The notes: generated by a model from the sequence alone, not told the origin. Positions 43,212 through 56,939 are shown, numbered from the whole stretch's first letter. The stretch: DNA of 63,654 bases, filler included, from Intoshia linei (GCA_001642005.1; 5 parts of 5 records of this genome joined end to end with filler, not necessarily neighbours in it); one strand, 5' to 3'. Numbers and translations are program-made.

Positions 43212-44425
43212 TACATTGAATATATTCATTTGCTAAACTTTTGCATTTTATCAAACCAACAGATGCCACCGCATCACGCGATAAAAGATCGGCTGTATAG
43301 TTTAATACTTCAGGTCGATATATTATGTATAATTATGTATATATATGTCATAATTAAATTCGTCTAACTTCAACATCCATCTAATCAATTCCATTGGTAA
43401 ATTCTTTGACCGACGCATTTCAACAATTGGATTATGATCATGAATTATTTTGCAATATCGTTCTATAATATATCTCCTGAAATGATTAGCTACTTTACAT
43501 ACGGCAAACAATTCTTTTTTTGTGGTACTATAATTTTTTTCAGTGTCACTAAGTTTTTTATTGAAATATTCTACGACTTTGCCACCCTGTAATAATACTG
43601 AAGCCATACCTTCGTTTGAGGCATCACACTTCATAACAAAATCTTATTTATTAGTCATAAATCAATTAATATATATAGTATTAAGTACATAAATCTGCGG
43701 TAAAATGAACACATTCCTAAAAATCTTCGCATTTGTCGCATAGTTTTTTAGGTGGGCATACTTCGTCAAAACACAATACTTTTGATGGATCAACCATAAC
43801 ACCATTTTTATTTATCACATGACCTAACACCTTAATTTCGTCAATTCCAATTATACATTTTTTTGGTTTGACAATTAATCCAGCATTTTGCAATGCCATC
43901 AATACACAATTTAAATTTTTACTATGTTTTTCATTAGAATGCGATGCAATGATGATATCATCGAGATGGACTGTCAACGTTATCAATATTTTTCAGTACC
44001 TGGTCCATCATTCGTTGGTAATTCGATGGTGCATTTGACAGTCCTTGCGGCATCATTAATTCATCAATTCAGTACTGAACGCCGTTTTCCATCGGTCTTC
44101 TTTACATACGGGTATTTGCCAAAATCCATTAATTAAATCTAATGTAGAAAATATTGTACGATCCGATAGAAATTCTAGACAATCTTTAATGTTAGGTGCA
44201 GGATATTTATCTCTAGCAGTATTTGCGTTAAGAGAACGGTAGTCTATAACCATTCTATCTGTTTTGTCCTTTTTTTTATTAAAAAATACCTTGAACTATG
44301 AAAGCTTCTGCTGGCTTCTATAATATCATTACTCAATAATTCTTTAATTAATTTTGAATGTTTTTCTCGCAATTTTATACCAATGGGAAAAGGTTTCATC
44401 ACTCTTAAATTAATGTTAATTAACG
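43212..44425 (-). mobile_element. Degenerate Ty3/Gypsy pol (RT plus RNase H)
   Basis: VIDYRSLN, FSTLDLINGFWQIP, HLDDIII, KCDASNEG, NYSTTKKELFAV, HDHNP; frameshifted. Confidence 0.93.
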
Positions 44426-44966: not shown

Positions 44967-45399
44967 TATTTTATATTTATCTTAACATTTTTGTATGAAT
45001 TTAATAATGACATTTGAGAGGGTAAATATTAATCGATTTATTTGTTTTTGATAAATGCTTAAAATCAAAAAAGGTATTCACGTGCAAAATTAGCATTTCT
45101 AATAAAAAAAAGTGGACACCCTAATCAATATACATTTTTAATTTCATTAACTTTCTTCCTATCTCTCATTCCACGATAACCGGCTTGAATAGTTGTAGCT
45201 GCAGCTTCCTAAAAAAAGTAAAAAATGGAAAACCGTACAAACTTGTTGCTCATTTAGTGAATATTCAATTAAACTTTTTTTTTGTTCCTGTTGTTCAGAT
45301 TCGTGCTCAATTGATTCCAATTCATTGTCGATCGGGTATGAATTTTTGTCGTTTAATGCATTCTGGTTTTTCTAGAAAATGGTCAATTTTTTAAATATT

Positions 45400-46780
45400 T
45401 CACTTTACCACTGATATTTCGGAATCTTCGTCTGCAAAATCTTGATTGGATTCGCTCAACTTCTCTTGTTCCAATTTTTCAAATGTACTTTCTGGTTCTT
45501 GCTGAATTAAATTGCTCTTTTGGGATAATTTTTCAAATTCTAGTGAATTTTTTTTAGACATTACATCATCTTGTGAGGATGGTCGCAAGATATCTTTAAG
45601 TGATTCATTTTCATGTATGGATTCTTTTTTTATAGAGTCTCTTTTTATGGATTCTCTTTTCACAGAGTCTCTTTTAATTGAATTTCGTTTTGATGCAACT
45701 GATTCTCGTTTTGATGAAATTGAGTCTCTTTTAGGGTTAACATCTTTTCCATTGATTGATTCTTTTTCAGATATAGATTCTTTCTTAGATTCTCTATCCT
45801 TTGAAATCGAACTTTTAATAGTTGGTGTATTTTTTTTCTGAGTGTCTTTTGTAACAATTGAGCTTTTCTTTGATATTACTGTTTCTCGTGAATTTGATTC
45901 GCGTTTTTTTAAATTGTCCCTTATTGGTTTATCAGATTTTATTGATTTTCGTTTTTTATTTTTATTTTCATTTTCTTTGTCAATTTTTTCCGTTTTTCCA
46001 CTATTTTGACTTTCGTTATCTACAGACCCATTAATACTTTTTGATTCACTTTTACGTTTTATAATGATATCTTTAAATTCTTTATCATTTCCTTGTGTTA
46101 AAAATGTTTTCTTTGGTTCACTGAAATCATTAATTTCTTCCTATGTTAATATATAGAAAGACAAATTTTAGTGTATAATATTATATAATAGTTTAATAAA
46201 ATATAAATAATGTAAATAAATGTTACTATAAATCGACAATTGTATACAAGCTCATTTTATTTTAAAAATTAAATCATTATCATCGGTGAAAGTAATCAAA
46301 TATATAATAATAAAAATGAAAATGGCGCCATTGAATAAAACAATCACAGGTAACAAATAACAAATATTAACAAATAAATTTACCATGAAAATTAATGAAA
46401 TTCATCAATTTTTAGTCAAACTACTTTAGCGCTATTTAATACATTTTTTATCACAGGTAACATATGACAAGTGTGAAAATGATCAACAATAAATAATAAA
46501 TTAATTTTTTATTTTATCATTATTCGATATTAAAACGAAATGAAATGAAAAGGTATTATTAAAAATAATAAATTACATTAACTTGCTCTGCTTCCATTTG
46601 TTCTACGGGTAAATCTATATTTACATCCTCACTTTCTGGAACTTGTTCAGCAGTTTTAAGTGTTATTGGTTTTTTTTTCTCTGGTTTGTCTATTTTTTTT
46701 GATTTTATTTTATTAGTTTCATAGCTTGTAATTGGTAATTTTTCTTCCGTTTTCTCTTTTTTCGGTTTTTTATCTATCAT
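45400..46780 (-). CDS. Lys/Glu/Ser-rich low-complexity protein exons (about 46780-46580 and 46140-45409) with 5-residue (K/R)ES(I/L)x repeats
   Basis: An acceptor at 46142-46141 opens a stop-free frame of about 245 codons containing KRESIKRDSIKKESI-type repeats. Start and end are unresolved. Confidence 0.6.
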
Positions 46781-48288
46781 TTCATTTATAGTACATGTAT
46801 TTGAATCGACAACAAAAGCAATGAAAAAAATTTGATAAATATTTATAGAATTTTTATATATTACAGAAAAATGACGTTAGGAATAATAAAATTTTTCTTC
46901 GTCATTTCAATAAAATTTTAAAATCATTTTCTTAACTTTTTTAGCTAAAATAGCATTTCTTTTTTATTTTTCTAAGAGAATTATTGATTATATGCTTAAA
47001 TTCTTGAAAAAAATTGATATTAATTTTTTAATTAGGGGGCGATTCTAAAAAAACCTTTAGAACTAGTCATGAATACGGATCGAAAAAATATCAAAAATAT
47101 CTAATTTTAGATTACATAGAAATTATAGACTACAAATAATTTTGATCAAAATTTTAATTTTTATTGATTAACTTATAAATTTGTTCCACTTCATTTATTA
47201 ACACGATGCATGTGATAACATTTGAAATGTGTTAGCATTTCTATATTTTCCAACTACATATGTACTGCATATGAAGTATATAACACGCGTAGTGTTAACA
47301 CTATAAGATAAAAATTGTGGGTCCCTATATCAAATAAAATAAAATGTCATGTCTTTTTACATACAAAATATTTAATAAATTCTCCAACACTAAGTTATAT
47401 AATAAAAATCCATGATCCATAATTCATAATAACAAATACTGATGATCGGATCAATCATACCCCTGATTCCTCTAATTTTAAAAATAATAATAACTTTACA
47501 TTTTTCTATAAAAAATTCGCATAGAAATCTTAGAGACACCACCTTTCTCTCTTATAATAATTATGGTAGTTTCCAAGTTCCGAATAATGTTCAGTAAACT
47601 TTTATGATATTCATAAATTTATAATATCTATTTTTTCAATATTTTATATAATATATTTACGTATCTGTAACGTAACATTTAATTCTTAAAAATCGGCAAT
47701 TCAAAACAGTTGTATACAAAAAATTTTAATAAAATCGTATCAGGTAAATTTAGAAAAGTAAATGGAAAACTAGTCGTTAAATATAAATTAATACTACTAT
47801 TTACTTTAATAACAAATAATGATTTTATTGATTTGTGCTTTAAGAAAATCTCAATTACAAAATTTTTACTCGAGTCTAAAGATTGTATACACTTTTACAC
47901 ATAAATAATATTTTTAAATTAAATGTGTCAATGCAAACCATTTTATTTCAATGTAATTATTGTTGTTATGTGTTGATAAATTAAGTACTTTATAACTGAA
48001 AGGAATCAATTTCATTCAAATTATAAAAAATGATAGAAATGAATTATAATTAGTGCAGTTTAATAAATGGTTTAATTGTTAAAATTAAAATCTCAAAGGG
48101 GTAATTATATATAATCGTAAATTACTTTTTTTAATTTTTCGTTTATCAAATTTCGATTTTGCTGCTTTTACAAGTAAAACTTCCTTTTCCCTGAAAAGAA
48201 TTATATACAAAATCATCACGTATAATACACTGCGATTTGAGAATAAGTTTTTTCTTGGGCTGGTTTGGTGTAATTGGGTTTCTCGTTT

Positions 48289-49326
48289 TCATTTGAATCT
48301 TGATGGTAATAACTTTGAATATTATATTCTTTACGTCTAACTAATAACTTGCTGTGGTTTCCTAACCTCGAATATGTGGGTACGGGAGCTTTTTCAAATT
48401 TTCTAATATTAATTTTATCGACAATTAATTTTAATTTTAAAAATTACTTGATAAATGCAGATTTGTTGAGGGTTGTAATAAAGGAAGGCCGTACATTTCC
48501 ATAAGGCACTTTGATGAATCTACTCATGGTATTCCCCACAGCCACATAAAAATTTCCATTCTCTAATTGGCGAATATGTCTAATGCGTCTGCCTTTAGCT
48601 GTATATAAACTGAAAATATAAATTTTAGTTTCGTTATATTTTACTATTTCACTCCACCACTGTGGGATTTTATTTTTTGGGAAATGTATGCATTTATGTT
48701 TTTTAGGCTATTTCGAATAGAATTTGGTAATACAAGGTGTTTGGCTGCATCATATTCATTTCCGTTTTCGTATATACTAAATTGCACTTATTAATGCATT
48801 TATTACCATTTACTTTAAAGTTAAGCCATCTATAGGAATATGTTTGATTCTACCAGACATTTGTATCCGACTATGAATAACAGGCTTTATCTAAATTACT
48901 TTTAATTTTAAACATTTAAGTTATTCACTGGTTTTTCACGCTGTGTAGCTTGTTGTACGGGATTTATTATTGTTATATTTTTGTAACTAAAATTTAAATT
49001 TCATTAATTGTTCATTTTTACTTTATTTTTCTGAATGGTATTTTTCCTTGAATGGCAACATAACTCTCTCGGTCCATCAATTTTTCAAATGATTTGATGC
49101 GAGTACCATGAGACGGTGTGCGTATGCTACGGACTGCTCTATCGCAGTTTAACATTGATGTAAGTTCAATCATAAATGTTTCAAACGTTCGGAATTTACT
49201 TCTACAATCACATGATTATATGCACATTATGTTTAACCTATTGATAACAACGTCTCGTCCGCTGAAATATTTTGACCCATTCAAATAGAATCGGACTCTT
49301 TTTGAAGCTATTGGTACGTAGCTCAT
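48289..49326 (-). CDS. Doublecortin domain-containing protein (two DCX domains, DCDC2-like); 3' end uncertain
   Basis: KRVRFYLNGSKYFSGRDVVINR|SKFRTFETFMIELT...AVRSIRTPSHGTRI...YVA, then IYENGNEY...LYTAKGRRI...LENGNFYVAVG...FIKVPY. Introns are about 35 nt. Confidence 0.85.
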
Positions 49327-49796
49327 CTTTAAGTGTTTACTAGTTTCGTATGAATATAAATATTTTTGTGTTCCGTGGACTAATTTCAACAATTTCAACT
49401 GTACATTGTCCAAGTGGTATATTCAAGTAAAAATGTTTTGTACGTTTTGTTAAACTTTTTCCTGTTAAATAGTTAAACGAACACAAATGTAAGTCGATTT
49501 GTTAGGTAAATGTACATAGCATAAAACAATAACAATATATTAATTATGTTACAGTATACTTCTATTCATTCATAACTTAACGATTAATTCATTGGTTGTA
49601 TTGCATTGTTATTTACTCATAGATACAAGTCTAACACTCATGAACTCAATTACTTTCACAATTTAATGATTTTAACGAAAAGAAATGCAAACTCCCGTCT
49701 GCGATACCTGTTAATTTATCAATCTATCAGCCACATACATAACCATGCAATTAAATATTCAATAATATATAACTTTTATTTTCAAAATGTACATTT

Positions 49797-52700
49797 TTAA
49801 TTATGGTATTTTTTTTCAATTTTACCCTGATCAGATATGGTTTTCATTTTATCACTAAAATCAAAAATTAATTATAATAAATTGTTATTATTCTATTTAT
49901 AAGTACTTACGTCATTCTATCAAGCTGTTCATCGTTTAATGTAGTTGAAAGCCACATCCATATCTTGAATAAATTTTTTCTAACCGATAGGGTTAAACCG
50001 TTAACGTAATCATTAAATTCACCCAGAGTTGCACCAGCAAATTGATACACCTAAATTTAATGGATTAAAATAAAATATGGTATACGTAGGATTCCCAAGC
50101 ATCGTCTATTGCAGTTTGACTTGATTCAAAGATGCATACCATTCTAAAACCATTTTTATTTTTTTCATCCTCCCATGCAGGTCTGATACCTTTCTAAAAA
50201 TAAAAGTAAATACTTTCTAAATTCAAGTGTTTGTTGGCTAAGCACAGTAAACAATAACCTGTCATAAAATACCTTTTTTGAGTAAACAGAAAGTAGCCCA
50301 CGGGTAAAGATGAGTAATTATGTGTATGTTAGGAATATCCATTTGAAAAATTTTTAAATCAAATAAGACCACGACTTTTGATTTAAATGTACCCCAAAAT
50401 GAAAATATTTTGAAATTTGATACTAAATTAAATTACAATTTTAAAAATGATCCAACTATTGGTAAAAATGGACAATATATTATTATAGAACAAATAACTA
50501 TAGAAACCAATTTAAAAAGTAGAATACAAATATATAATAATATATTAATATGTAAATTAGTTTAATCTCATTTCAAGGTTAAAATATCTAACCAAAACTT
50601 GTTACAAATTTGTAATGGCCTTTGATTGGTATATAATTTCATTGGCTATTCTAATTACCCACTCCGCTATTTCATTTTCTGAAGTGTTTACATCAAAATC
50701 CGGCCAAAATATTCTTATAAACTTTTAAACCATAATTAAAAAATTTTCATGTTTAGAGAATAATGAATATACTGAATGGGGTATTTTAAAAATATTTTTG
50801 AATAATAAAAATTACCTTAAAAAGGTTCACATCAACATATCCACCGTTGCTACGTATTTCTGTCGGTTTTTTAATGTATTCAAACACTCTAAAACAATAA
50901 ATAAACTATTATATCAACTCAATATTAACAATTCCACTAAATGGTGCAAACATTGGTTTTAAATTTATTTTTTTAAATAATAAAAAAAAATTTTCTAGAC
51001 AGATAAAAATCCGCGGTGAAATTTTCAACTTATCACCCAATAGAAAATTTTTAATTTCAAATAATTTGTGTAATATAAAATTATAAGTTACTGCAAAAGT
51101 TCAAAAGCACTATCTAAATCTGATAAATGTTCAAAATTGTCCCAGGCTGCTCCTCCTTCACTTAAACGTAACGATAGTGTCAATTCAACGGGAAGTGGGT
51201 ATTTATCATTTTGAGTGAGTTCAACGTTCTAAAAAATAAAATAGTTTAATTTTTAGTTATTAATCCAATGCTTCGTAAAGGGATGGATAATATATAACAT
51301 TAATGATCTATTTTAGATGAATTTTATTTGGGTTGTATTCAGAGAAATTTTACCATCAAATTACAAATTAGATACAGTTAAGGTTTTAATTGATTTTCAA
51401 AACCTTTGTGAGCCTATAATTTTTTTAATCACTGGATTCATGAACTTTAATTACAAAAGATTGCATGAATCAAATAGTATTATTCATAATACAAAATTTT
51501 GACACCAATTTACTAGAACAATGGCGACAGAACGGGTGTTTGCGTGTTAAAAATACACTATTTATGATCTTTTGAAGACACGTTAATAAAACATTCACAT
51601 ATGTCAATATAATTTAAAATTTTAATTTATATCAAAAGATTAAAGAAGGTTGAATTCTGTAACATTGAAATTTACATGTTAGGTTCACCCTATTGAAAAA
51701 ATAAAATATATTTTTTTTCCTTCGCAAATTAAAAAAATCTTCACGGCTAAAACCTCAAATTACCCCGTTTTGTGAAAATGAAACATTTGTGGATATCAAA
51801 AAAATCATAAAATTTAAAATCATAAACATTATCATAAATCGCAAAGCCAAAATGTGACTTTTTTACAAAACCAAACTATAGATTACCCTTTTTTTTAAAA
51901 ATGAAAATAGTCCTAGAATTTAAAAAAAATACAATTGATACAGCTATATCCAGGTAACACACAGTAAAAATTTCAATCTGATAAAGTGACGACTTTACAG
52001 TCAAAAAAGCACTTTAGTATTGATTTTTTTATAAACTATTTTATTAAATGTAAAACAACAAATTTGAAATAATTAATGGTCCTAGAAATTACAAAAAAGA
52101 TTATTACTGATACAGCTTATTCCAGTTGATATAGATACAAAATTTCAACCCCATTAATCTATGCATTACTGGTGAAAAATAACTCAATATATTATCAATC
52201 AATATTTTTCAAATTTTCAACATTTCCACAAAGGGATATGGTAGAAATCTTATAAATTAATTCCTTAGGTTTTTTTAATGCTACGCAAAGAATTAAAAAA
52301 ATGCCGGCGGCAGATCTAGGCGTTGTTTGTACGATATGCATAACAGTCAAATTTGTAATTTAATAATTATACCATATTATGGCTTTATTATTTTTCAATT
52401 GGCCAAATTACCTTTTTTTAAAAATTAAACAATTCAGTATATTATAATATAAAACAAAAATGTTGGGATAGTTTTTTAAATAATAAACCCGATGCCAGGT
52501 TCTACTATATTTCCATAGTATTTCTATATTACACAAAAACATCGCAAGATTTCAATTAAATAGTCACATTCTTGCCTAAATTTATCTATAAAATTTAATT
52601 TTAAATTCCAGTGTCACTACTTTGAATTAATTTTAATGATAAACTAATAATTTTATTCATTCATTTCCCAGGTAACGGTTTATGCAGTAAAATTCAAATA

Positions 52701-52815
52701 AAAATATTAAACACAATGTCAAAGTATAAACGATATTAAATTATTCTAATATATAATTAACATGTATTACTTTCTCTTGTTCAGTTTCAACTTTTTCTAC
52801 AGTTTCAGCCATCAT
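49797..52815 (-). CDS. Divergent eIF4E-family protein A, 186 aa; exons 52815-52771, 51228-51092, 50888-50816, 50193-50086, 50050-49911, 49854-49797
   Basis: LFK|KGIRPAWEDEKNKNG, DDAW, VNGLTLSVRK...KIWMW and terminal YH. Exon lengths sum to 561 nt with consistent phases. Confidence 0.9.
51735..52350 (+). mobile_element. Diverged Helitron-family copy in intron 1 of eIF4E-A
   Basis: Colinear blocks with 22160-22930 plus a degenerate 3' end GGCAGATCTAGGCGTTGTTTGTACG...TAACAGTCAA. Confidence 0.7.
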
Positions 52816-52992
52816 TTAAAATATTTTAGAATTAATAATGATGTAAATATTTTTACAAATGAATGTGCGACGACTTAATATTAAAATAACTTTAGTGCTA
52901 ATAGTAATAAGTTATTATTACTAATAACGTAGTTTACATTGTAAATTTTACAATAAATAAAGGTTAAAACTAATCTTTGTAACGCAATTTAA

Positions 52993-53820
52993 CCCTTTCA
53001 CTGTCTGTGTATTCTATGACAGCAATTCTCAACCTTTTTCAGGCCATGTCTTAAAAAAGTTTTGCCCAAAATTCCATGACCCACCTTAAAAAACCTTAAA
53101 ATATCTACTTTTATTTTCAGTAAAATGCTTTATTTATTTAAATTTATACTAGTTAGTGACTGCCTTGGCATTGGCGTTTGTTGCACAATGAATCGTAATC
53201 AATTTCTATTAGTTTATTTAATCTTAAACGCATTATTCCTCGGTTGTTCACATTCAATTTTGACCTCTTCTTACTAAAAATATTGACCACTGCTGAAAAT
53301 CCAGCTTTTACAATCCATATTGTAGGAAAAGCAATAATGCTTGGTTGGACATTATCAAACACAATTGGATTTGATTCTTGAATTCCCATAAATCCAAATA
53401 CACCTTCCTTTTTTATTCGTCTTACTAATTTCAAATCTTTTTTCAAAACTTAAAATAATTAAATCAAGTTCAAGAGTTTTTCAGTTAGTTCAGGACTGGT
53501 TCCATCATCTGGTTCAAAGTTTTGAAGATCTATAAACCTTAATTCCAAATTTATATTTCAAATTCATTATGCATTTATAGATTTTGTTTTGGTTAGCAAT
53601 TTTATGGCTTAATACACCAAATTTTTTTTAATGTTGAAAATTTTCTGTGGCCCACGTTGATAACCCGTTCTATGATATACAACATAATTTTGAAAAACTT
53701 TATTCTTTTATTTTCATATATTTTCTCATAGGTAATTTAAAAATAATAAAATTTTAAATTAAAAAATAAATGCCAGACGTGTGGTGATAGTACATAAAAT
53801 TGCATCAGACAGTGAAAGGG
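52993..53820. mobile_element. piggyBac-like MITE containing a Buster/Charlie hAT derivative (53020-53667)
   Basis: TTAA|CCCTTTCACTGTCTG ... CAGACAGTGAAAGGG|TTAG. The inner element has TSD TTCTATGA and a minus-strand remnant IAFPTIWIVKAGFS...KKRSKL...RQCQGSH (Buster C-terminus). Confidence 0.85.
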
Positions 53821-54381
53821 TTAGACATTACTACACTGTAAAGGTTAATTATTTTATCTGAAACTACTAAAACTGTACGTTAATAAAAAATATTTAAATT
53901 GTTATCCATTCACACAATAGTCACCAAACCTGTTTTTCAGAGCCACCCTTCTAAATTTATTTTTATTATTTGAAGATGCAGAATACAATACTATTTGAAA
54001 GTATATCGCCCACCACACTTGGTAAAAACTAATCTTGTGAACTGTTCTATAAATCAAAATCTTATAACATAAATTTATTAAAATAAAGGCAGTCTCATAA
54101 ATCTGTTAAATAATGTTTATTTTTAAAGGTGGTTCTAAAGATTGCCATCAAAAAATTTCATCTTGTAATAAATCATTAGACAATGCTATTTTTTTCTATA
54201 CAAGTGTACTGTGCAAATTTTCTGATTCGAAACTTTCTCACGCCATTACTATCGTCAATTCAGAACAATTTTAAGCAGAATTGATGAAGATAAGAATGTG
54301 TTTTAAAAGTAAATTGTTCAAAACTTAAAATTAGAGACGACGATTTAATATACAAACTTATATTTAAAAAATCAAACAATT

Positions 54382-55647
54382 TTATTGAGGTTGATGATAT
54401 ATTCTTTTCAAAACAATGGGATTTTGAACTTTACTATTGACCTTTTCTCTAAAAAAATAACAACAAATAAAACATGTAAAACTTGAAAAAGAGATCTTCA
54501 TCAATTGAAGGTATCCTTTTAAGCCAAATCCAAATTTTAAAAACTTGATTACGTACACTTAAAACTACACCATTGATATCATTATTCATATAATCAAAAC
54601 TAGCACCAGCAAACATGAGAACCTAAAAATGTGAAAATTTTAGCAAAAATAATGTGACTATTACAATACTACACCAAGTATCATCAACACAATCTTCTCC
54701 AACAATTATACAATATCGTAATCCGTTCATATTACTGACGTCCTCCCAAGCAGGAGTTATATTTAACTAAATTTCCAAATTAACCCATAGAAATTCAATT
54801 GAATCTTGATAAAATCTCAAAATGGGAGAATTATCAGAGGTCTCACTAAAGTTTAGTGACTAAACAATGAATCGCAGTAAAAAAATTTCTAAATAGTGAA
54901 TTTTAGTGAATCACAGTTGACCAAAGAGATTTTAGTTCTCTTCTATTTTTTTACTGTGATTAACTGAAATGTACTTGGATTCACTATTTAAAAATTTTTT
55001 TACTGCAATTCACTGTTTAGTGAGACCCAATTATCAGAACACATTTTCTACATATAAAGTTAAAATAATTTTTTTATATATTGAGCAATATTAAAATCAT
55101 AAATGATGGAATTTACCTCTACCATCTGAATAAACCCTATGAAAATACAATAAAATTTGCACCGTATAAAAATATATCGACATTTCTATGAAAAAGTTTT
55201 TTGTAAACATTTTTGTAATGTCAAATCCTTGCTTCAAATTGCGTTTATAGAAAAAATTTAAGTTGCCAAAAAGTTACAATGAAATAATAGATGTACTCAA
55301 GCCGACAAAAAATACCTTAAATAATGTGATATCCATTCGTTTTGAATCCTTCAATTGAGAGGGAGTTTTCAGAAATGCAAACAAACTAGAAACAATAAAT
55401 ATATTCCCAAAAAAAATAAAAACTGAAATAAATCTTCAACGTAAGCCATATCCATCACATGTTGAAAATTATCATTCCAGTTATCTTTGTGACTATCTAC
55501 TAGTCTTATAGTCATTGACAAATGAAATGGGAGTGGATATTTTTCATAATTTTGAATGACGCATTTTTTATTTAAATTCTTTCAAAATAAAAGTAAAAGC
55601 AACAAAATAAAAACCTCGCGAATAACTTCGTTTTCTTCAATATTCAT
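54382..55647 (-). CDS. Divergent eIF4E-family protein B, 188 aa; exons 55647-55615, 55578-55424, 55385-55316, 54766-54665, 54622-54483, 54448-54382
   Basis: YPLP...DNW...YVEDLF, DITLFK|LNITPAWEDVSNMNGLR, DDTW, INGVVLSVRNQVFKIWIW and terminal YH. Exons total 567 nt with the same intron phases as paralog A. Confidence 0.9.
54838..55028. mobile_element. MULE-like MITE in intron 3 of eIF4E-B
   Basis: Long inverted arms (GGTCTCACTAAA...GCAGTAAAAAAATTT / ...TTTAGTGAGACC) and 9-bp TSD AATTATCAG. Confidence 0.8.
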
Positions 55648-56212: not shown

Positions 56213-56939
56213 ATGATGAATAATGTGATGCCTTTACCTTTTCTGACTTTGATGGAATTACAGAGCATGTCAGAAATGCAATTTTCAACCTCTAACCACA
56301 CTTACAATATCCACCAAGAGGCTCATCAAGTTGTTTTGCATAATATTGTAAATCATCAACATTTACGTGATTGTGAAATTTTTGTCAAAAATATTACAAT
56401 AAGTTGGACAATTTGTAATCTATGTGCTTTATTTGAGGTTCACGGTGTCATTGTAACAATCAAAGTTGTATACAAAAAAAACTACATTCTTTGTTTTGTT
56501 CGATATAACAACGCTTGTAGTGCAGCTTTGGCTATTCGTTATATAAACAACATCATCAATAGCTTTACTTGTCAAAAAATATTGGCTTCCCTAAGCGTAG
56601 ACAATCGAAAAATTTTTATTGGGGCTCTTCCAACGGATAAAACTAAACAATGCATTGAACAAGAATTTTTACATAATTGTAATCTATCCATCAAGCATGT
56701 TGACTTTATTTTGTATGAAAATTTACACCCAAAATACTCAAATAGAGGATATGGGTTTCTTGAATATCATTCATATGAAGAAGCTCGGACTGTTCGAAAT
56801 TTTTTAATCGAAAATAAAATCAGCCTTTTTGGTATATTTATCTTAATTTATTGATTTATTAATTTTATTCGTAGGTAAACAAATTACTGTGAATTGGGCA
56901 CACCCCGAAAATACGGTTGATGCAATCACGATGAATCAG
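56213..56939 (+). CDS. hnRNP R/Q family RRM protein (SYNCRIP/A1CF/RBM46/RBM47/DND1-like); exons 56213-56831 and 56875-56939, remainder not found
   Basis: CEIFVKNI (RRM1), SVDNRKIFIGALP..KTK (RRM2), NRGYGFLEY, LFG|KQITVNWAHPE are family-specific motifs. Confidence 0.87.

What the first reader, a model, noticed from the sequence alone, without database searches (positions are those of the whole stretch)
49797..55647. Tandem pair of non-canonical eIF4E paralogs that keep the cap pocket but lose the eIF4G/4E-BP face
Seen: two intact, same-strand six-exon genes with identical intron phases (exon 5 is 140 nt in both), strongly diverged from each other and invisible in the ORF track. Aligned by eye to human eIF4E, both retain equivalents of W56, W102-E103, R112, R157, K162 and W166 (cap binding). 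H37 becomes Y, W43/W46 are replaced by non-aromatic residues (YPLPVELTLS; YPLPFHLSMT), and VEDFW73 becomes AFELL (A) or VEDLF (B). Established: H37/V69/W73 form the dorsal surface bound by YxxxxL-phi motifs, and the eIF4E classes are defined by residues 43/56. This pattern fits none of classes I-III. Inference: a lineage-specific cap-binding subfamily acting as repressors or with new partners.
Basis: partly seen in the sequence, partly recalled or inferred. Interest (0 to 1): 0.8.

Follow-up and report, generated by a model that had tools for sequence, protein, structure and literature searches.

The report
Divergent tandem eIF4E genes in Intoshia
Two neighbouring spliced genes of the parasitic orthonectid worm Intoshia linei encode very divergent copies of the mRNA cap-binding factor eIF4E; both keep the cap-binding residues but have a changed surface where eIF4E normally docks its partners, and they are real, already deposited but unstudied genes.

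Summary
The piece is a 14,305-nt Intoshia linei contig. It carries two intact minus-strand six-exon genes with GT-AG introns, intron phases 0,2,0,0,2 and a 140-nt exon 5 in both. They encode proteins of 186 aa (A) and 188/190 aa (B) that are 35% identical.

Both are eIF4E-family proteins: Pfam IF4E scores 87 and 96 bits. An AlphaFold model of B (pLDDT 86) matches solved eIF4E structures at TM 0.77-0.87.

W56, W102-E103, R112, R157, K162 and W166 are kept. H37 becomes Y, W43 becomes L, W46 becomes S or T, and W73 becomes L in A and F in B.

Both genes are already in GenBank. B is OAF66334.1. A is fused, probably wrongly, to the downstream doublecortin gene as OAF66332.1. A third, more degenerate paralogue (OAF66416.1) shares the gene structure and the PLPxxL signature.

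No close relatives turned up outside Intoshia. All three proteins are nearest to class I eIF4E but fail its W43 criterion.

"Loss of the eIF4G face" is plausible for A and weaker for B. It is untested, because I could not establish whether Intoshia also has a canonical eIF4E.

The parts
52771..52815 (-). Gene A exon 1 (ATG at 52815; 15 codons; ends in phase 0)
   Evidence: donor AAA|gtaata. Same start as database protein P0002.
51092..51228 (-). Gene A exon 2 (137 nt): KYPLPVELTLS...W44...SAFELL. Carries the equivalents of H37 (Y25), W43 (L31), W46 (S34), W56 (W44), V69 (A56) and W73 (L60).
   Evidence: for splice sites. for the HMMER alignment to Drosophila eIF4E-1. This exon alone has no Pfam or PDB hit.
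50816..50888 (-). Gene A exon 3 (73 nt), includes the D90 equivalent (D80)
50086..50193 (-). Gene A exon 4 (108 nt): KGIRPAWEDEKNKNGFR...DDAWESY. Carries the W102/E103, R112 and W130 equivalents.
   Evidence: Pfam IF4E at 1e-7 and 32.3 bits for this exon alone. Also.
49911..50050 (-). Gene A exon 5 (140 nt): ...NGLTLSVRKNLFKIWMW. Carries the R157, K162 and W166 equivalents.
   Evidence: IF4E at 9e-4 for this exon alone
49797..49854 (-). Gene A exon 6, with stop TAA at 49797-49799. The public annotation instead splices out at G|GTAAAA inside this exon, into the doublecortin gene.
   Evidence: The read-on tail GKIEKKYHN* matches B's ..KRIYHQPQ* and the last exon of P0003, GKIGVNYAPRL*.
55615..55647 (-). 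Gene B exon 1 (ATG at 55647; 11 codons)
   Evidence: Identical to P0001.
55424..55578 (-). Gene B exon 2 (155 nt): KYPLPFHLSMT...W45...YVEDLF. Carries the equivalents of H37 (Y25), W43 (L31), W46 (T34), W56 (W45), V69 (V58) and W73 (F62).
   Evidence: for the HMMER alignment to human eIF4E in full-length numbering.
55316..55385 (-). Gene B exon 3 (70 nt)
54665..54766 (-). Gene B exon 4 (102 nt with donor GTAATA, as annotated). A weaker in-frame donor, GTCACA at 54659, would add two residues. Carries the W102/E103, R112 and W130 equivalents.
   Evidence: The 54665 donor makes B colinear with A and with P0003.
54483..54622 (-). Gene B exon 5 (140 nt): carries the R157, K162 and W166 equivalents
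   Evidence: IF4E at 4.8e-6 for this exon alone
54382..54448 (-). Gene B exon 6, with stop TAA at 54382-54384

Best explanation
The two genes are old tandem duplicates of a class-I-type eIF4E gene in the orthonectid Intoshia linei. They belong to a small Intoshia-restricted group of very divergent eIF4E paralogues; a third member lies on another contig. Both most likely fold as ordinary 'cupped-hand' eIF4Es and still bind the mRNA 5' cap. The inferred mechanism is the canonical one: the methylated guanine stacked between the W56 and W102 equivalents, hydrogen-bonded by the E103 equivalent, with the phosphates held by the R112, R157 and K162 equivalents. The dorsal surface that canonical eIF4E uses to hold the YxxxxL-phi helix of eIF4G and 4E-BPs no longer follows the consensus. 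This is severe in A (V69A, W73L, L131E, E132S, L135Y) and partial in B (V69, F73 and L135 kept; L131C, E132S). Both also lack the long N-terminal tail and the C-terminal tail that carries S209. A is therefore most likely a cap-binding protein that does not recruit eIF4G in the canonical way, acting as a competitor or working with other partners. B may keep a weakened or re-tuned interaction. Shown here: gene structure, family membership, the fold of B, and the residue equivalences. Inferred: cap binding, loss of eIF4G binding, and any repressor role.
For: Gene models and identical intron phases: matching independent public models. Pfam IF4E for the full-length proteins: 95.8 bits (B), 87.3 (A inside P0002) and 64 (P0003), against a cutoff of 28.7; exons 4 and 5 of each gene also hit on their own. 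AlphaFold2 model of B: pLDDT 86.2, pTM 0.80. Foldseek top hits are all eIF4E structures (Ascaris eIF4E-3, C. elegans IFE-3, Drosophila and human eIF4E) at E about 1e-14 and TM 0.77-0.87. Residue map from HMMER alignments. Class I is the nearest class for all three paralogues. P0003 shares the position and phase of introns 1-4 and the PLPxxL motif, yet has L at W56 and F at W102. So these residues can be lost in this lineage, and their retention in A and B after divergence to 35% identity points to selection. An exon-5 profile search of 1.84 billion representatives found only the three Intoshia proteins as real hits. Non-aromatic substitutions at W73 abolish eIF4G and 4E-BP binding (PMC1260017).
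Against: There is no expression, binding or cross-species conservation data. dN/dS between A and B is 0.72/1.58 by NG86 but synonymous sites are saturated, so this is only weakly informative. Orthonectids are extremely fast-evolving, so a changed dorsal face could reflect co-evolution with an equally divergent eIF4G rather than loss of binding. B keeps an aromatic residue at 73. Exon 2, which carries W43, W46, W56 and W73, is too divergent to hit anything on its own, so its mapping rests on the full-length HMMER alignments. A was not folded.
Confidence: 0.62

Rival explanations
1. A and/or B are simply Intoshia's working general eIF4E. On this view there is no separate canonical copy, and the unusual dorsal residues reflect fast lineage-wide evolution with a co-evolved eIF4G, not a specialised or repressive subfamily.
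For: All three paralogues score best against class I eIF4E. No canonical Intoshia eIF4E surfaced in any search. The cap pocket is intact. B keeps V69, F73 and L135. E. cuniculi, another reduced parasite, has Leu at W73 in its class-I-like eIF4E (PMC1260017).
Against: The searches could not have found a canonical copy. The exon-5 profile was too short to reach even Drosophila or human eIF4E, and the word search missed all ordinary metazoan eIF4Es, so absence here means nothing. The dorsal positions also differ among A, B and P0003 (W73 is L, F and E; L131 is E, C and N), which is not what a single conserved eIF4G interface predicts.
Confidence: 0.25
2. One or both genes are relaxed or decaying duplicates with no function.
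For: Divergence is very high. Four of the eight conserved Trp residues are replaced. The sister paralogue P0003 has lost cap-stacking residues. No transcript-derived copies of the proteins exist in the protein collection: each cluster has a single member, from the genome record.
Against: Both reading frames are intact across six exons (chance probability about 1e-7). All ten splice sites are canonical. Every cap-contact residue is retained in both genes despite 35% identity. The model of B is confident.
Confidence: 0.07
3. Gene A is really the N-terminal domain of an eIF4E-doublecortin fusion protein, as the public annotation has it (OAF66332.1, 835 aa).
For: P0002 joins A's residues 1-173 to two DCX domains. 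The donor it uses, G|GTAAAA, looks good.
Against: That splice removes the last beta-strand of the eIF4E core. The read-on sequence GKIEKKYHN-stop matches the C-termini of B and P0003, including the H200-equivalent His/Tyr region. The homologous GKI codons are coding in P0003. The doublecortin part has its own in-frame Met just before the first DCX domain. An AATAAA lies about 20 nt after A's stop codon (weak evidence in AT-rich DNA).
Confidence: 0.06

Closest known systems
Class I eIF4E (Drosophila eIF4E-1, human eIF4E1; PDB 4ue8, 1ipb)
   Same: Best sequence match for A, B and P0003. Same fold. Same cap-contact residues: W56, W102, E103, R112, R157, K162, W166 and D90.
   Different: W43 is L, W46 is S or T, W113 is M or Y, W73 is L or F, and E132 is S. 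The N-terminus is very short, and the C-terminal tail after the H200 equivalent is missing, so there is no S209 site. Overall identity is only about 26-28%.
Tandemly duplicated Drosophila class I paralogues (eIF4E-3, -4, -5) and eIF4E-6 (PMC3382400)
   Same: A lineage-specific expansion of class I eIF4E by tandem duplication, with shared exon/intron structure. At least one paralogue there (eIF4E-6) binds neither eIF4G nor 4E-BP and does not rescue yeast.
   Different: The Drosophila paralogues keep nearly all eIF4G-contact residues and the class I Trp-43. The Intoshia genes do not, and they are far more divergent from each other.
4EHP / eIF4E2 (class II; PDB 2jgb)
   Same: A cap-binding eIF4E homologue that does not recruit eIF4G and acts as a repressor through other partners.
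   Different: Class II has Tyr or Phe at position 56 and keeps W73. A and B have Trp at 56 and score lower against 4EHP (44 and 33 bits) than against class I (61 and 54 bits).
Compacted eIF4Es of Encephalitozoon cuniculi and the Guillardia theta nucleomorph (PMC1260017)
   Same: Class-I-like proteins with short termini and Leu in place of W73, found in highly reduced genomes.
   Different: Those are single-copy factors in a microsporidian and a nucleomorph, not a multi-paralogue family in an animal. Relatedness to them was not tested here.
Nematode eIF4E-3/IFE-3 (PDB 3m93/3m94, 5abx)
   Same: Top structural matches to the model of B.
   Different: They rank first by a negligible margin over other class I structures. 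Nothing here bears on trimethylguanosine-cap binding.

Membership tests
eIF4E family (Pfam PF01652) | Sequence match to the IF4E profile above the curated cutoff | tested here: met
   B 95.8 bits, A (within P0002) 87.3 bits, P0003 64 bits; cutoff 28.7.
eIF4E family (Pfam PF01652) | Cupped-hand fold: curved eight-stranded antiparallel sheet backed by three long helices | tested here: met
   For B only. AF2 pLDDT 86, pTM 0.80, strand/helix order as in eIF4E. Foldseek TM 0.77-0.87 to eIF4E structures. A was not folded because its spliced sequence has no reference.
eIF4E family (Pfam PF01652) | Cap-contact residues: W56, W102, E103, W166, R112, R157, K162 | tested here: met
   HMMER alignments, (B against human; A against Drosophila). 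All are present in A and B. P0003 lacks W56 and W102.
eIF4E family (Pfam PF01652) | Binds the m7G cap | not testable with these tools
   Needs an m7GTP-resin pull-down or fluorescence titration.
Class I eIF4E (Joshi et al. 2005) | Trp at both position 43 and position 56 | tested here: not met
   Position 43 is Leu in A, B and P0003; position 56 is Trp in A and B. Definition taken from PMC1260017.
Class I eIF4E (Joshi et al. 2005) | Dorsal (S/T)V(E/D)(E/D)FW motif with Trp-73, which mediates eIF4G and 4E-BP binding | tested here: not met
   A has SAFELL and B has YVEDLF. Actual binding was not tested.
Class II eIF4E (4EHP/nCBP) | Tyr/Phe/Leu at 43 and Tyr/Phe at 56 | tested here: not met
   Position 56 is Trp. 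Similarity to 4EHP is lower than to class I.
Class III eIF4E (eIF4E3) | Trp at 43 and Cys/Tyr at 56 | tested here: not met
   The pattern is the opposite (L43, W56). Mouse eIF4E3 scores 20.6 bits for B and is not reported for A.

The most novel reading that the evidence does not exclude
Intoshia linei has no canonical eIF4E at all. In that case these W43/W46/W73-less proteins carry out general cap-dependent initiation, and an animal would have rebuilt, or dispensed with, the universally conserved Trp-73-centred eIF4E-eIF4G/4E-BP interface.
Probability: 0.15. Interest if true: 0.7.

Novelty: new variant of a known kind. Interest (0 to 1): 0.4.

Why it matters
eIF4E is the gatekeeper of cap-dependent translation, and its Trp-73 dorsal surface is almost invariant in animals, fungi and plants. 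An animal lineage with several eIF4E paralogues that keep the cap slot but not that surface gives natural variants for two questions: which contacts are really needed for eIF4G or 4E-BP recruitment, and how translation control is rewired in an extremely reduced parasite. In practical terms, this work corrects a probable mis-fusion in the public annotation (eIF4E-like gene A joined to a doublecortin gene). It also links three scattered entries ('mRNA cap-binding protein', 'doublecortin domain-containing protein 2C, partial' and 'hypothetical protein') into one family. The significance is moderate, because divergent lineage-specific eIF4E paralogues are a known theme and nothing functional has been shown.

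Tried and rejected
- **Exon 2 on its own.** Exon 2 of either gene gave no hit in Pfam or the PDB, even at E up to 10. Its residue mapping therefore relies on the full-length alignments of the database proteins P0001 and P0002.
- **Word-index searches.** Searching with P0001 returned only P0001 itself. Searching with a profile of B, P0003 and A's exons as separate rows returned 15 unnamed protist- or fungus-like eIF4Es that all keep VEDFW-type motifs. It found no other Intoshia protein and no named metazoan references. It evidently missed ordinary metazoan eIF4Es, so it says nothing about whether Intoshia has a canonical copy.
- **Third word search not spent.** No available query by reference would have targeted an Intoshia canonical eIF4E.
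- **No maximum-likelihood tree.** A tree with metazoan class I, II and III references was not built because no such reference sequences were available by id. Class placement rests on the definitional residues and on HMMER scores against PDB sequences.
- **Spurious hits.** P0004 and P0005 from the exon-5 profile search are repeat proteins, not eIF4E.
- **dN/dS.** NG86 gave dN 0.72 and dS 1.58. The other methods failed on saturation, so this is treated as uninformative.
- **Joined gene A not sent to any search or fold tool.** A's spliced protein has no reference. It was searched exon by exon and through P0002, whose first 173 residues are identical to A. Joined A and B sequences were built from window.fa only inside local scripts. 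They were used there for translation, pairwise identity, dN/dS, and a local tblastn against this piece and L001.
- **Literature.** No paper in the library mentions both Intoshia and eIF4E, and nothing was found on trans-splicing in orthonectids.
Full report
**What is there.** The region is 26% GC and has no long ORFs. Stop-to-stop frames on the minus strand contain eIF4E-like peptides. Joining them at GT-AG sites gives two complete genes.

- Gene A exons are 52815-52771, 51228-51092, 50888-50816, 50193-50086, 50050-49911 and 49854-49797. It encodes 186 aa and has introns of 1542, 203, 622, 35 and 56 nt.
- Gene B exons are 55647-55615, 55578-55424, 55385-55316, 54766-54665 (or 54659), 54622-54483 and 54448-54382. 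It encodes 188 or 190 aa and has introns of 36, 38, about 550, about 40 and 34 nt.
- Intron phases are 0,2,0,0,2 in both genes, and exon 5 is 140 nt in both.
- The two proteins are 35% identical.
- The piece holds no third copy.
- An open frame of 186 codons has a chance probability of about 1e-7 at this base composition.

**Organism and existing annotation.** I aligned exon 5 of A and B by reference and searched that profile against 1.84 billion representative proteins. It gave five hits. Two are repeat proteins. The other three are all from the orthonectid Intoshia linei, assembly GCA_001642005.1.

- P0001 (OAF66334.1, 'mRNA cap-binding protein', 188 aa) is gene B exactly. It uses the GTAATA donor at 54665.
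- P0002 (OAF66332.1, 'Doublecortin domain-containing protein 2C, partial', 835 aa) is gene A for residues 1-173. It then splices from G|GTAAAA inside my exon 6 into the downstream gene, which encodes two DCX domains.
- P0003 (OAF66416.1, hypothetical, 196 aa) is a third paralogue on contig LWCA01000938.1.

The contig recorded for P0001 and P0002 is 14,305 nt, which is the length of this piece. The genes are therefore already deposited. No paper in the library mentions Intoshia together with eIF4E.

**The A-doublecortin fusion is probably an annotation error.** Reading on past the predicted donor gives GKIEKKYHN-stop. This lines up with B's C-terminus (..LKRIYHQPQ-stop) and with the annotated last exon of P0003 (GKIGVNYAPRL-stop), which is the final strand of the eIF4E core next to the H200 equivalent. 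The fusion would delete that strand. The doublecortin part also has an in-frame Met just before its first DCX domain. RNA-seq is needed to settle this.

**Family membership.**

- Exon by exon, Pfam IF4E hits exon 4 and exon 5 of both genes. A's exon 4 scores 32.3 bits and E 1e-7.
- The full-length database proteins score 95.8 bits (B), 87.3 (A part of P0002) and 64 (P0003), against a cutoff of 28.7.
- An AlphaFold2 model of B was built from a 20-row alignment in which A's exons entered as separate rows. It has pLDDT 86.2 and pTM 0.80 and the expected order of strands and helices.
- Foldseek against the PDB returns only eIF4E-family structures at the top, with E about 1e-14 and TM 0.77-0.87.
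- A's spliced protein has no reference, so it was not folded or searched as a joined sequence. It was searched exon by exon and through P0002.

| Human residue | A | B |
|---|---|---|
| H37 | Y25 | Y25 |
| P38 | P26 | P26 |
| W43 | L31 | L31 |
| W46 | S34 | T34 |
| W56 | W44 | W45 |
| V69 | A56 | V58 |
| W73 | L60 | F62 |
| D90 | D80 | D81 |
| W102-E103 | W92-E93 | W93-E94 |
| R112 | R102 | R103 |
| W113 | M103 | Y104 |
| W130 | W118 | W117 |
| L131 | E119 | C118 |
| E132 | S120 | S119 |
| L135 | Y123 | L122 |
| R157 | R145 | R144 |
| K162 | K150 | K149 |
| W166 | W154 | W153 |

- Every cap-contact residue is kept in both proteins.
- Of the seven canonical eIF4G/4E-BP contacts listed in PMC1260017 (H37, P38, V69, W73, L131, E132, L135), A keeps one and B keeps three. 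B also has an aromatic Phe at position 73.
- That paper states that non-aromatic substitutions at W73 abolish eIF4G and 4E-BP binding. The prediction of lost binding is therefore reasonable for A and weaker for B.
- Both proteins end a few residues after the H200 equivalent, so they lack the tail with S209.

**The third paralogue as an internal control.** Position and phase of introns 1-4 in P0003 match A and B. This holds once the GTGAGT donor right after ..AWNET is used instead of the annotated read-through. P0003 also shares the PLPxxL motif with Leu at position 43 and the NG..LS.R..F.IW.W block. However, it has Leu at the W56 position, Phe at W102 and Glu at W73. The W43, W46 and W73 changes therefore predate the split of the three genes. 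The cap-stacking tryptophans can be lost in this lineage, so their retention in both A and B at 35% identity argues for continued selection for cap binding. The formal dN/dS (0.72/1.58, NG86) is compromised by saturation.

**Class assignment.** The definitions in PMC1260017 and PMC3382400 are as follows: class I has W43 and W56; class II has Y/F/L at 43 and Y/F at 56; class III has W43 and C/Y at 56. By similarity they are class-I-derived. The table shows phmmer bit scores against PDB chains.

| PDB protein | B | A | P0003 |
|---|---|---|---|
| Drosophila eIF4E-1 | 61 | 54 | 29 |
| Human eIF4E1 | 51 | 44 | 27 |
| 4EHP | 44 | 33 | 14 |
| Mouse eIF4E3 | 21 | none | none |

I could not build a proper tree, because no metazoan reference sequences were available by id. 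Such a tree would in any case suffer from long branches.

**Lineage restriction and its limits.** The full-scan profile search found only the three Intoshia proteins. The word-index searches found no close relatives; the 15 weak hits are ordinary protist- or fungus-like eIF4Es that keep VEDFW-type motifs. This supports a sequence signature restricted to Intoshia within what the databases hold. Three limits apply.

- The exon-5 profile is short.
- The sister genomes (Intoshia variabili, Rhopalura) may not be in the collection.
- Neither search could have detected a canonical Intoshia eIF4E.

Whether A and B are accessory paralogues or the organism's only eIF4Es therefore remains open. That question decides between 'specialised or repressive subfamily' and 'fast-evolved general factor with a co-evolved partner'.

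**Verdict.** These are real, intact, class-I-derived but atypical eIF4E paralogues with an intact cap pocket and a non-consensus dorsal face, strongly so in A and partly so in B. They are part of an Intoshia-specific trio. They are a new variant of a well-known kind: lineage-specific eIF4E expansions such as the Drosophila tandem paralogues, including a non-eIF4G-binding member. They are already present in GenBank but uncharacterised, and one is probably mis-annotated as a fusion.

Noticed in passing
window 52993-53820 (between genes A and B): An 828-bp element bounded by perfect 15-nt terminal inverted repeats, CCCTTTCACTGTCTG. These are the only two occurrences in the window, where 0 are expected by chance. 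It is flanked by TTAA on one side and TTAG on the other. It looks like a non-autonomous piggyBac-like MITE. Its internal 98-aa ORF has no Pfam hit.
   Followed up: partly
window 54859-55021 (intron 3 of gene B): A near-perfect 68-nt-arm inverted repeat that folds as a long hairpin (DNA MFE -39.8 kcal/mol, z -9.6). It is probably a small palindromic MITE.
   Followed up: partly
window about 45190-49385, minus strand: The gene downstream of A encodes two doublecortin (DCX) domains followed by a long Lys/Ser/Glu-rich low-complexity tail. The public annotation fuses it to eIF4E-like gene A (OAF66332.1, 835 aa, 'partial'), probably wrongly.
   Followed up: partly
window 43323-44400, minus strand: Fragments of a retrotransposon pol gene in different frames (RVT_1 and RT_RNaseH Pfam hits), that is, a decayed LTR or gypsy-type element at the contig end.
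   Followed up: partly
window 56213-56854, plus strand: A 213-aa open exon encoding an RRM-type RNA-binding protein (RRM_1 at 6e-12, with a weak match to a second RRM model). It is transcribed divergently from gene B.
   Followed up: no
L001 5146-5400 (I. linei contig LWCA01000938.1, gene for OAF66416.1): The annotated exon 4 of the third eIF4E paralogue reads through a consensus GTGAGT donor that lies right after ..AWNET. Using that donor removes 13 residues and makes the protein colinear with A and B, so the deposited model probably contains retained intron sequence.
   Followed up: partly
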